Positions 44,201 to 49,700 of a stretch of DNA of 64,000 bases are shown here, one piece after another. The translations under genes were made by a program, and so were the position numbers. The stretch covers positions 87,420,001 to 87,484,000 of the forward strand of contig NC_079169.1 of assembly GCF_947568905.1 (NCBI RefSeq), in the 5' to 3' direction. Position 1 is the first letter of the stretch. The number at the start of each line of letters is the position of its first letter. This stretch comes from Ostrea edulis (Eukaryota). The notes below the pieces were generated by a model, which did no database searches, had not been told where the DNA came from, and saw only the letters and a program-made list of their open reading frames with translations.

Positions 44201-45909
44201 GTGGTGTGTATGATTGATTGATTAAATATTGTTTAATGTCCCTCTCGAGAATATTTCACTCATATGGAGACGTCACCACTGCCGGTGAAGGGCTGCAAAA
44301 TTTAGGCCTATGCTCGGCACTTATGGCCTTTGAGCAGGGAAGGATCTTTATCGTGCCACACCTGCTATGACATGGGACCTCAGTTTTTGCAGTCTCATCC
44401 GAGGGACTGCCCCAGGGGTACTGAGGACTGGATCCCCTCGGGACGAGATGGTGTGTGATATTGTAAGGTGCTGTGTGCTATTATGAGGTGCTGTGTGATA
44501 TTGTGAGGTGCTGTGATACTGATGTGTTGTGTAATATTGTGAGGTGTTTTGTGATTTTGTGAGGTGCTGTGTGATATTGCCAGGTACTGAGTGATATTGA
44601 GGTGCTGTGTGACAATGCAAGGTGCTCAGTGATATTGAGGTGCTGTGTGACATTGTGAGGTGCTGTGTGATATTGAGGTGCTGTGGTATATTGTAAGGTG
44701 CTGTGTGACATTGCGAGGTGCTGTGTGGAATTGTGAGGTACTGAGAGATATTGTGAAGTGCTGTGTGATATTGAAGTGTTGTGTGATATTGAGGTGCTGT
44801 GTGACATTGTGAGGTACTGTGTGATATTGTGAGGTACTGAGTGATAATGAGGTGCTGTGTGATATTGTGAGGTGCTGTGTGACATTGTGAGGTGCTGTGT
44901 GATATTGTGAGGTACTGAGTGATAATGAGGTGCTGTGTGACATTGTGAGGTGCTGTGTGACATTGTGAGGTGCTGTGTGACATTGTGAGGTACTGAGTGA
45001 TAATGAGGTGCTGTGTGATATTGTGAGGTGCTGTGTGATATTGTGAGGTACTGAGTGATAATGAGGTGCTGTGTGATATTGTGAGGTACTGAGTGATATT
45101 GTGAGGTGCTGTGTGATATTGTGAGGTACTGTGTGATATTGAGGTGCTGTGTGATATTGTGAGGTACTGGGTGATATTGTGAGGTACTGAGTGATAATGA
45201 GGTGCTGTGTGATATTGCCAGGTGCTCTGAATTGCTTTTAGTGACTGACCTAGAGTATCTGGGATATCAGCCACTGGTTTATGACTGGTCAGATTGACGG
45301 TTCCCTGCCGTTCTGTCCTAAACCGCCCCCGTCTGTCATCTTCCTTGTCACTTTCATCACTTTCCTCACTGCTATCCTGCCCTCGGTCAACAGAAACCTG
45401 CAAGTCAAATAAGAAACAATCTTATACCAAGCACTGACAGAACCCTGCAAGTCAAATTAGAAACAATCTTATACCAAGCATAGGTGTGTACAATATAACT
45501 GAGAGAATTGTTATACATCATGTAAAGATAAACTACAACGATCTGGTGGACCATATTCTGTTGGTATACAAGTGGTGAAAATTCTAACTCTCAACACAGT
45601 AGTGATTTAAATCTCGATTGCATAAAAATCTGCATGTTCTGCACATCACTCGGATGCCATGTTTGTTGTTTTTTGTGTATATGTAAAATCTAAACCAAAC
45701 CGAACTCCAGAATTTGTAATCGGTGCATCGAATTGAATGGTATGAATCGCAATGCAACGATTGCTAATGTTACCATATATATATTGGATTATGCTAATTA
45801 ACATTACCACATATATATAGGATTATGCTAATTAACATTACCACATATATAAAGGATTATGCTAATTAACATTACCACATATATATAGGATTATGCTAAT
45901 TAACATTAC

Positions 45910-45948
<39 letters not shown>

Positions 45949-47708
45949 ATTCTAATTAACATCATCACATATATATTGGATTATGCTAATGTTACCACAT
46001 AGATATTGGATTATGCTAATATTGCAACATATATATTGGATTATGCTAATGTTACCACATAGATATTGGATTATGCTAATGTAACGTCATGTATTGAAAT
46101 TGCACCCCCTCTGAATATATGTAACTGTATTTTTGTACACTTTAAGCTTTTGTATAAAAACTGAAACAAATAGTGAAGATTGTTTTCTTACCTCCATACT
46201 TGAGATATCTGATTGGTCTTCTATCTCTTCCTCATCTGTCCGACTAATTGGGACAATATTTCTGACCACCTGGGGCTTTACGAACGGATCATCTTCTGTC
46301 CCTTCACTCTGTAACACAATTACAAATAAGACATTTATATATTTACTCTATCATAACCTGCCTACTTTTAATGTTAATTCATGAACTTCTTGTCTGATCA
46401 CTGTTCACATTAACCGTTTACTCCTAATAATGGATGAACTCCTTGTTGGACTACTGCTCATCCACGTTTGCTTATTTCTAATGTTAATGCATGGTTAAAC
46501 TTCCTACCTGACTACTCTCAAAAAACGACTCCGTCATTCCAGACTCGTCAAAGTCGTAACTCTCCTCCGGATCCAAAAGTAACACAGGCTCGGGCTCAGA
46601 AAACCTGTACAAATTTAAATCTCTGATAGTTAAAACAATGGGTGTGTAACAAAATAATAATTTCCAGTCAGAAAGATAGTCCTTAAATCTCTGATAGTTA
46701 AAACAATGGGTGTGTAACAAAATAGTCATTTCCAGTCAGATATATAACCGTTAAATCTCTGATAGTTAAAACAATGGGTGTGTAAATAAATAGTCATTTC
46801 CAGTCAGAAAGATAACAGTTAAATCCAGGAATGGGTGGAAAAAAAAACCCTTCTTTTCAAACAGTATTTCTGAAGACAAAGAAAACTTTAATGGGATCTG
46901 TTGTGAAGTCCGGGTTGCAAATAACCACTCGCAAATGTGAGTAATTCTATTTGTGGGCAACCAGATTATGAAAATCCTCTCGCCCACATGACGAGTAAAA
47001 GTTTATCAGAACTTTTTTCGGAAATCTGCTCACGGTTTGATACCTCTTTTTTCACTGTTTCATTATCAATAACCTTGAAACGAATCAAACGTTATATTGA
47101 TGAAGGTTATGGGAAAGTTAACAGGTGGAAATTCATTGAAGGGGTTTCTTAACCCATTGAAAAATGCAAAGATTATTTCTCCGACTATCAAAGAAAAAAA
47201 TTTCATTGAAATGGGGGAGAAAAAACGTGCATGGTTAGCAAATACAGACATGGTAGAGGACGAGTCAGAGAGAAATCAGAGGACTGATGGTGAGAGAAAT
47301 AGACAATGGATGAGAGTTTGAATGAACTTGAAATGGAGTTGATTTAAAAGAAAAAGACATTGTCATAGGAGTTTTATCCTTTTATATACATATGTAGGTA
47401 CGTTTATGATAAAATTGTTATTTGCAACTATAGGCCCTAAAAGTATTTATGTGGGCCCAAATGACCCATAAACTTTTGACTGTTATTTGCAACCCTGAAA
47501 GTACAAGTAAATGTATTTTTTTTTTTTTTTTTTTTTAAAGCTAGAACCTATTTCTGCATGCCCTATGTATAAAACTATCTCTCCTAAAATATGAAGAAAT
47601 ATAATTATTTACTGCCACTCATTTTTAAATTTTCATATTGTTATATCTCAAGTCTGTAGCAACATCTAGATTTCTAAATTTGATTTGCAGGTATCATTTT
47701 ACCACTAC

Positions 47709-49121: not shown

Positions 49122-49418
49122 GTTGATTTGGTCAATTATTGATTCTTCATGTTTGATATCTTATTCACCCAAATTCTGGAAAGAGAAAGAGATCAAGACG
49201 ATATGACATCTTGGTAAATAGTAACAGTATGTATAAACACACACAAGTTCATTTCTAAGTCATGTTTAGATATAATAACATCACAATGTGGTGATTGCAC
49301 CCAACTTTGCCAGGCCATTGCTTTACATATCATTAGGCATATATGCATATCTCATTATTGGCGTGTAATTTTGGGTAATATCATATAAACAAAATCCTCA
49401 CTATATACCATTATATAT

Positions 49419-49700
49419 AGGGCTGTGTGGTGAACCGAAAATTTCGGTGCACCGCGATTCATACCATTCGATTCGATGCACCGATTACAAATTCCGGATT
49501 TCGGTTCGGTTTAGATTTTACTTACACCAAAACAACAAATATGGCGTCCGAGTGATGTGCAGAACATGTGTTTTTTATGCAACAGAGATTTAAATAAAAA
49601 ATGTTGAGAGTTAGCATTTTCACCACTCATGCAGATACCAACAGAATATAGTCCGTAAGATCATTGAAGTTTATCTTTACATGATATATAGCATTTCTGT
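49419..49700 (+). mobile_element. hAT-like element end (tagggctgtg terminus)
   Basis: TAGGG-type terminus; partner of 45512-45750. Confidence 0.6.

What the first reader, a model, noticed from the sequence alone, without database searches (positions are those of the whole stretch)
45512..49690. Inverted repeat pair brackets RBM33 coding exons 1-5: predicted circRNA
Seen: about 240-bp reverse-complementary transposon fragments (roughly 80% identical by eye) lie in the intron before exon 1 (49454-49690) and the intron after exon 5 (45512-45750). Known: flanking intronic complementary repeats promote back-splicing, and I recall that human RBM33 yields a circRNA from its early exons. Inference: back-splicing 46192 to 49175 gives a 678-nt circle containing the start codon and encoding 208 aa plus NLGE-stop.
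Basis: partly seen in the sequence, partly recalled or inferred. Interest (0 to 1): 0.7.

Follow-up and report, generated by a model that had tools for sequence, protein, structure and literature searches.

The report
Transposon inverted pair around RBM33-like exons
Two copies of a common oyster transposon sit in opposite orientation in the introns on either side of the first five coding exons of the flat oyster's RBM33-like gene. They could pair strongly enough in the RNA to make a 678-base circular RNA, but no RNA data were reachable, so the circle remains a reasonable, untested prediction of a well-known kind.

Summary
Window 45498-45760 and 49444-49704 are reverse-complementary (85% over 267 nt). 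Both are pieces of a ~760-bp non-autonomous hAT-type transposon (8-bp terminal inverted repeats, 8-bp target duplications, at least 359 copies in the genome). The arithmetic is right: 678 nt, ATG at 49121, 208 codons, then NLGE-stop.

Points in favour of a circle:
- As RNA the arms pair very strongly (net -236 kcal/mol; -8 for shuffles), and they still pair when the whole 4.3-kb segment folds.
- They lie about 270 and 430 nt from the two splice sites, with no competing partner in the window.
- The exon-1 acceptor is a conserved internal splice site.
- Human circRBM33 (exons 2-5) is documented.

Points against or missing:
- No RNA run holds this stretch. The four runs found are genomic DNA, so back-splicing could not be tested.
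- The arms are independent insertions of different age.
- The Saccostrea ortholog has no such pair.
- Start-codon circles have never been shown to be translated.

Verdict: a real structure able to drive back-splicing, and an ordinary kind of prediction, still unproven.

The parts
49417..49956 (-). Upstream copy of a non-autonomous hAT-type element. It is 5'-truncated (540 of ~760 bp) and has an intact 3' end ...CACAGCCCTA with a 29-nt subterminal palindrome.
   Evidence: 92-94% identical to 11 other genomic copies; boundaries.
49444..49704 (-). Upstream arm of the inverted repeat; it ends 268 nt before the exon-1 acceptor.
   Evidence: 85% over 267 nt against the downstream arm.
45498..45760 (+). 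Downstream arm: a 263-bp internal fragment of the same hAT family in opposite orientation. It starts 431 nt after the exon-5 donor and ends about 100 nt before the exon-6 acceptor.
   Evidence: 85-87% identical to family members, covering element positions 475-734.
49084..49175 (-). First coding exon (92 nt; the transcript's second exon). Acceptor CAG at 49178-49176, main ATG at 49121-49119, small uORF at 49150-49136.
48572..48614 (-). Coding exon 2 (43 nt).
48081..48409 (-). Coding exon 3 (329 nt).
46508..46604 (-). Coding exon 4 (97 nt).
46192..46308 (-). Coding exon 5 (117 nt, phase 0 at both ends); donor GTAAGA at 46191.
45398..46191 (-). Intron 5 (794 nt). It holds the downstream arm, a 34/68-nt tandem repeat (45762-46085) and a duplicated exon-6 acceptor (45390-45480).
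56306..56410 (-). Candidate non-coding exon 0 and start-site region, inferred by homology only. Conserved GCCATCTTT at 56399-56391; possible donors at 56354, 56347 or 56306. If correct, intron 0 is about 7.1 kb and contains the upstream hAT copy.

Best explanation
Two independent insertions of a high-copy, non-autonomous hAT-type DNA transposon lie in opposite orientation in the Ostrea edulis RBM33-like gene. One is in the long intron upstream of the first coding exon; the other is in the short intron after coding exon 5. In the pre-mRNA they would form an imperfect duplex of about 260 bp that brings the exon-5 donor (46192) and the exon-1 acceptor (49175) to within about 700 nt of each other. 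That geometry promotes back-splicing in animals. The most likely outcome is a low-abundance, lineage-specific 678-nt exonic circRNA that carries the start codon. It would be a by-product of transposon insertion rather than a selected or translated product. Shown here: the repeat, its family, the exon model, the internal acceptor and the pairing energy. Inferred: that the upstream arm is transcribed, that back-splicing happens, and how abundant the product is.
For: The repeat is real and strong. RNA cofolding gives -341.8 kcal/mol, net -236 against -8 +/- 3 for shuffles. In the minimum-energy fold of the whole 4311-nt segment, 224 of 261 upstream-arm nucleotides pair with the downstream arm, and forbidding long-range pairs costs 222 kcal/mol. 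No other copy of the family is in the window, and no other long inverted pair brackets these exons. The exon borders are canonical and match NCBI's protein at 99-100% identity. The pyrimidine tract and CAG acceptor at 49176 are conserved in Saccostrea, while the sequence upstream is not. mRNA contigs from two related oysters join a separate exon 0 at exactly that acceptor. A candidate exon 0 at about 56.3-56.4 kb puts the upstream arm inside a 7.1-kb intron. From the literature: proximal inverted elements are enriched at circularising exons, and an artificially inserted inverted element gives 'clean and efficient' circle production (PMC6487579). Human RBM33 produces a circle from exons 2-5 (PMC10086746).
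Against: There is no RNA evidence at all. No indexed RNA run holds the stretch, and the four holders are genomic DNA. No transcript-derived protein fragment from O. edulis was found for these exons. [quoted passage not shown] The downstream intron is short (794 nt), which favours fast linear splicing. The arms' 85% identity is what shared ancestry predicts (93% and 86% identity to family members), so nothing indicates selection for pairing. The position of exon 0 rests on a 76-nt conserved block and a 9-nt motif.
Confidence: 0.5

Rival explanations
1. The pair is inert for splicing. The two hAT fragments are neutral intronic debris. Co-transcriptional linear splicing removes intron 0 and the short intron 5 before or despite pairing, and RNA helicases or ADAR unwind or edit the duplex. 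No circRNA accumulates; at most, the arms carry A-to-I editing.
For: Only about a two-fold enrichment of proximal inverted elements at circularising exons, and DHX9 suppresses such circles (PMC6487579). The downstream intron is short, at 794 nt. The arms are of different age with no sign of maintained complementarity. The pair is absent from Saccostrea. Inverted pairs are frequent in this genome. NCBI lists only full-length protein isoforms X1 and X2.
Against: The duplex is very stable, close to both splice sites and without competitors. Inverted repeats suffice for circularisation in minigenes. By my own recollection, not read here, much shorter repeats also suffice and the same holds at the Drosophila laccase2 locus.
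Confidence: 0.42
2. The circle exists and is translated from the host start codon into a 212-residue protein (208 aa of the acidic N-terminus plus NLGE).
For: The frame is open from ATG 49121 through exon 5 and stops five codons after the junction.
Against: A systematic study found no evidence that start-codon circles are translated (PMC6487579). The stop right after the acceptor lies in ordinary 5'UTR sequence that is also present in Saccostrea, which lacks the pair. A conserved small uORF sits just before the ATG. No data here bear on translation.
Confidence: 0.03
3. RBM33 early-exon circularisation is an ancient, conserved trait shared by molluscs and vertebrates. It would be driven mainly by the long upstream intron, with the hAT pair only reinforcing it in O. 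edulis.
For: Human circRBM33 comes from exons 2-5. Start-codon circles tend to be conserved and to have long flanking introns, possibly extending to invertebrates. The inferred intron 0 is about 7.1 kb.
Against: No circle evidence in any oyster: the relatives' transcript contigs are all linear. The Pacific oyster circRNA paper does not mention the gene. Correspondence between the human and oyster exons was not tested. The downstream intron is short.
Confidence: 0.05

Closest known systems
Exonic circRNAs driven by flanking intronic inverted repeats (inverted Alu pairs in primates; the DNAREP1 pair at Drosophila laccase2, cited in PMC6487579)
   Same: Transposon-derived reverse-complementary sequences lie in the two introns flanking internal exons, close to a canonical acceptor and donor, and the predicted duplex is long and stable.
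   Different: The repeats here are hAT-type DNA-transposon fragments in a bivalve, and no back-splice junction has been observed. Membership is predicted, not shown.
AUG circRNAs (Stagsted et al. 2019, PMC6487579)
   Same: The predicted circle starts at the exon that carries the host gene's start codon and holds the N-terminal reading frame. The upstream intron is probably long, at about 7.1 kb.
   Different: That class is typically free of proximal inverted elements, is conserved between species and has long introns on both sides. Here the inverted pair is proximal and lineage-specific, and the downstream intron is only 794 nt.
Human circRBM33 (hsa_circ_0001771; exons 2-5 of RBM33; PMC10086746)
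   Same: The host gene family is the same (RBM33 / RBM33-like), and the circle would come from early exons.
   Different: The oyster repeat pair is absent even from another oyster, so any similarity would be convergent. Exon correspondence with the human gene was not examined, and no human sequence was handled.
Non-autonomous hAT elements (MITE-like DNA transposons)
   Same: 8-bp target-site duplications, short terminal inverted repeats beginning TAG, a small non-coding body (~760 bp) and hundreds of copies.
   Different: The autonomous partner and its transposase were not sought. Both copies in the window are truncated and can no longer transpose.

Membership tests
Inverted-repeat-driven exonic circRNA | Back-splice junction present in RNA (RNase R-resistant; donor of a downstream exon joined to the acceptor of an upstream exon) | not testable with these tools
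   No RNA run holds the stretch. The four runs laid are genomic DNA, with contigs running through exon-intron borders. The joined junction sequence was not searched.
Inverted-repeat-driven exonic circRNA | Reverse-complementary sequences in the two flanking introns, able to pair | tested here: met
   85% over 267 nt. Net cofold energy -236 kcal/mol against -8 for shuffles. The arms pair in the global fold of the 4311-nt segment.
Inverted-repeat-driven exonic circRNA | The 5' exon of the circle has a real, internal 3' splice site, and the 3' exon has a real donor | tested here: met
   The acceptor tract and CAG are conserved in Saccostrea. Related oysters' mRNAs are spliced from an exon 0 at the homologous acceptor. 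The donor at 46191 is used in NCBI's model. Direct O. edulis transcript evidence is lacking.
Inverted-repeat-driven exonic circRNA | Both arms lie in the same primary transcript | tested here: inconclusive
   The downstream arm is certainly intronic (intron 5). The upstream arm is intronic only if exon 0 lies at about 56.3-56.4 kb, as inferred from a conserved block and motif.
AUG circRNA | The circle includes the annotated start codon | tested here: met
   ATG at 49121 lies in the first exon of the predicted circle. This holds in silico only.
AUG circRNA | Long flanking introns, no proximal inverted elements, conservation between species | tested here: not met
   The downstream intron is 794 nt. 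The inverted elements are proximal, at about 700 nt total distance. The pair is absent in Saccostrea. Conservation of a circle itself is untestable here.
RBM33 orthologue | C-terminal RRM plus the collinear acidic / RF(K/R)xER motif architecture, with best vertebrate matches named RBM33 | tested here: met
   The C-terminal RRM is 36% identical to a fish RBM33 (E = 8e-12), and the RFRTER...IPDTLE motif is collinear. RRM_1 scores 19.2 bits, just under the 20.7 cut-off. All named vertebrate hits are RBM33. NCBI names P0006 'RNA-binding protein 33-like'.
Non-autonomous hAT transposon | 8-bp target-site duplication and short terminal inverted repeats | tested here: met
   Perfect 8-bp duplications flank 7 full-length copies; the termini are TAGGGCTG...CAGCCCTA.
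Non-autonomous hAT transposon | A related autonomous element encoding a hAT transposase | not tested
   Not sought.

The most novel reading that the evidence does not exclude
RBM33's start-proximal exons circularise in both a mollusc and humans. This would be either an ancient start-codon circle that in O. edulis has been reinforced by a lineage-specific hAT pair, or a convergent one. Because the circle removes the start codon from the linear product, back-splicing would act as a sink that lowers RBM33 protein output.
Probability: 0.08. Interest if true: 0.55.

Novelty: new member of a known kind. Interest (0 to 1): 0.25.

Why it matters
If the circle exists, it would be a clean natural example in a bivalve of a DNA-transposon pair creating a lineage-specific circRNA. 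Sister oysters lack the pair and would serve as built-in controls. It would also give a host-gene parallel with human circRBM33. Without RNA evidence it is only one of many such predictable configurations in a repeat-rich genome. It adds nothing new to how circRNAs are understood to form.

Tried and rejected
1. RNA evidence: the look-up of sequencing runs returned no RNA holder. Read laying on the four holders showed DNA only. Its 'opposite strands' joints between the arms come from other genomic copies of the transposon, not from RNA.
2. Transcript-derived protein fragments: exon 3 alone gave nothing. P0006:1-208 gave only a partly spliced transcript from another oyster, with exons 1-3 joined and intron 3 retained. 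NCBI's O. edulis protein has no retrievable encoding contig.
3. A Helitron reading of the repeat, prompted by the subterminal hairpin and apparently absent terminal repeats, was rejected once the true 5' end showed 8-bp terminal inverted repeats and 8-bp target duplications.
4. Pfam on single exons and on the Saccostrea protein gave nothing. The Protein Data Bank holds no relative.
5. Finding exon 0 with the relatives' 5'UTR by short-word blast gave only noise. Genome-to-genome comparison gave the one usable block.
6. Literature: there is no O. edulis circRNA study. The Pacific oyster circRNA paper does not mention the gene and has no held supplements.
7. Earlier notes of this scan hold nothing on this repeat.
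8. The joined exon model and the back-splice junction were deliberately not built or searched. Exons were handled by reference, one at a time, or through NCBI's stored protein.

Full report
**Observation**

The inverted repeat exists. The repeat finder reports four gapless blocks between 45498-45760 and 49444-49704, 82-95% complementary. MAFFT and blastn join them into one match of 85% over 267 nt, E = 9e-73.

**What the repeat is**

- The upstream arm matches hundreds of places in the window's own genome. There are 561 first-look candidates, and the 40 that were scored are 91-94% identical.
- A conserved 32-mer occurs 359 times at up to 2 mismatches, against 0 for the reversed control.
- Extending the comparison showed that the upstream copy is 540 bp (49417-49956) and is 5'-truncated. 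Full-length members are about 760 bp.
- Full-length copies end in 8-bp terminal inverted repeats (TAGGGCTG...CAGCCCTA). Seven of them are flanked by perfect 8-bp target-site duplications. That is the signature of a non-autonomous hAT-type DNA transposon. A first impression of a Helitron, from the 29-nt subterminal palindrome, was dropped.
- The downstream arm is a 263-bp internal fragment (element positions 475-734) in the opposite orientation.
- The upstream copy is 92-94% identical to family members and the downstream one 85-87%. They are therefore independent insertions of different age. Their mutual 85% is what common descent gives, with no sign that complementarity has been maintained.

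**The gene**

- A profile-free search with the large 229-aa exon found a 1041-aa protein, P0002. NCBI calls it 'RNA-binding protein 33-like [Saccostrea echinata]'.
- A word search with P0002 found P0006, 'RNA-binding protein 33-like isoform X2 [Ostrea edulis]', on a 93.5-Mb contig, and vertebrate proteins named RBM33.
- P0006 lies on the window's minus strand from 49121 to 23212. It matches the five N-terminal exons at 99-100% identity, so the window is O. edulis or something nearly identical.
- The exons are 49175-49084, 48614-48572, 48409-48081, 46604-46508 and 46308-46192. That is 92+43+329+97+117 = 678 nt.
- The coding part from ATG 49121 is 624 nt, or 208 codons. Exon 5 ends in phase 0. 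The first 15 nt of exon 1 read NLGE-stop.
The exon model rests on NCBI's stored protein and on piecewise references.
- The RBM33 assignment rests on three things. The C-terminal RRM is 36% identical to a fish RBM33 (E = 8e-12). The RFRTER...IPDTLE motif is collinear. RRM_1 scores 19.2 bits, just below the 20.7 cut-off.

**Is the first coding exon an internal exon?**

Back-splicing needs a real 3' splice site upstream of the first exon of the circle.

- The pyrimidine tract and CAG at 49176 are conserved in the Saccostrea locus (TTTCTCTTTCCAG|A against TTTGTCTTTGCAG|A). Similarity collapses immediately upstream.
- Full-length mRNA contigs from a related oyster (L014, L015) have 113-125 nt of 5'UTR, against 54 nt in the window between the acceptor and the ATG. 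At exactly the homologous position they switch from exon-1 sequence to an unrelated stretch ending ...AAGCAG.
- A third oyster's contigs do the same.
- So the acceptor is used, and a non-coding exon 0 exists.
- Its likely place in the window is about 56.3-56.4 kb. The only collinear conserved block upstream is 56444-56369 against Saccostrea (E = 3e-6). It contains GCCATCTTT (56399-56391), and that motif or its ATCTTT end also sits at the 5' ends of the relatives' mRNAs.
- That would make intron 0 about 7.1 kb, with the hAT copy near its 3' end. This placement is inferred, not shown.

**Pairing potential**

- On the RNA strand the two arms cofold at -341.8 kcal/mol. The net gain over the separate arms' folds is -236, against -8 +/- 3 for shuffled partners.
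- When the whole 4311-nt segment is folded, 224 of 261 upstream-arm nucleotides pair with the downstream arm. Forbidding pairs that span more than 1500 nt costs 222 kcal/mol.
- The arms end 268 nt before the acceptor and begin 431 nt after the donor.
- No third copy of the family is in the window, and no other long inverted pair brackets these exons.

**RNA evidence**

There is none.

- The look-up of sequencing runs listed no RNA holder.
- The four holders are genomic DNA. Their contigs run through exon-intron borders, for example X1 48732-49458 and X2 48136-49144. The 'opposite strands' joints between the arms are other transposon copies.
- Those runs do show that both insertions are present in at least one other individual. 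X1 record 7 bridges the junction at 49417/8, and X1 record 1 joins unique flank to the downstream arm.
- Protein-level searches for transcript fragments found only linear or partly spliced transcripts from other oysters.
- No O. edulis circRNA study is in the paper library.

**Comparison with what is known**

- The Saccostrea ortholog has neither the hAT element nor any comparable inverted pair. Any parallel with the human circle would be convergent.
- Stagsted et al. (PMC6487579) define start-codon ('AUG') circRNAs. These are mostly independent of inverted repeats and associated with long flanking introns. No evidence supports their translation.
- The same paper reports proximal inverted elements at 45% of circularising exons against 22% of host exons, which is an enrichment and not a determinant. 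It also shows that an inserted inverted element drives efficient circularisation in minigenes.
- The locus therefore meets the structural requirements of repeat-driven circularisation, and the defining feature, the junction itself, is untested.

**Is it more than chance?**

For this family alone, 359-561 copies in 895 Mb predict about 0.3-0.8 inverted pairs within 4.3 kb genome-wide, so the pair is unusual for the family. But the window alone has at least six long inverted pairs of various repeats. A scan that looks at many windows will meet such configurations often, so no functional inference follows from the arrangement itself.

**Verdict**

This is a real transposon pair able to drive back-splicing, in a correctly modelled RBM33-like gene. 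I put about even odds on a detectable, low-level, lineage-specific 678-nt circle. The odds are low that it is translated or conserved. It is an ordinary member of a known kind if it proves true, and it can be tested directly with one RT-PCR or one total-RNA library.

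Noticed in passing
window 49136-49150 (-): A tiny upstream ORF (MKNQ-stop) lies in the 5'UTR part of exon 1, 11-17 nt before the main ATG. Counterparts exist in Saccostrea (ATGGAGCAATAA) and in two related oysters' mRNAs (L014 ATGAGGCAGTAG; L016 ATGAGGCAACAATAA). It may be a conserved translational control element.
   Followed up: partly
window 45408-45459: DNA runs X1-X3 carry a 50-nt deletion here. This is copy-number variation of the 47-nt tandem duplication that repeats the exon-6 acceptor (45390-45480); the assembly has about two copies and these individuals have one.
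   Followed up: partly
window 56391-56399 (-); L013 ~7080-7095; 5' ends of L014, L015, L016: The GCCATCTTT motif is conserved between two oyster genomes, and it or its ATCTTT end also sits at the 5' ends of related oysters' RBM33-like mRNAs. It looks like a start-site-proximal promoter element; from memory, it resembles YY1-type sites.
   Followed up: partly
window 26782-27577 vs 28085-28719: A large inverted pair (up to 634 nt, 82-87%) lies entirely within one intron of the same gene, between the 229-aa exon and the RRM exons. It brackets no exon.
   Followed up: no
window 58658-59097 vs 63321-63760: A 440-nt inverted pair at 94% identity lies upstream of the gene, near the Penelope-like element noted by another reader at 59176-59224.
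   Followed up: no
window 46870-47500 and 47708-48005 (intron 3): A second repeat family (raised depth and many 'skips' joints in all DNA runs), a 26-nt G run (C on the + strand, 47708-47733) and a 122-nt x2 tandem duplication (47756-48005). Contigs of most of the four runs break here.
   Followed up: no
L016-L018 (related oyster, Logan RNA contigs): Three independent runs hold a partly spliced RBM33-like transcript with introns 1 and 2 removed and intron 3 retained, giving a 127-aa ORF ending ...IVPIE-stop. Intron 3 is also the longest internal intron in the window's gene, so it may be slow to splice.
   Followed up: partly
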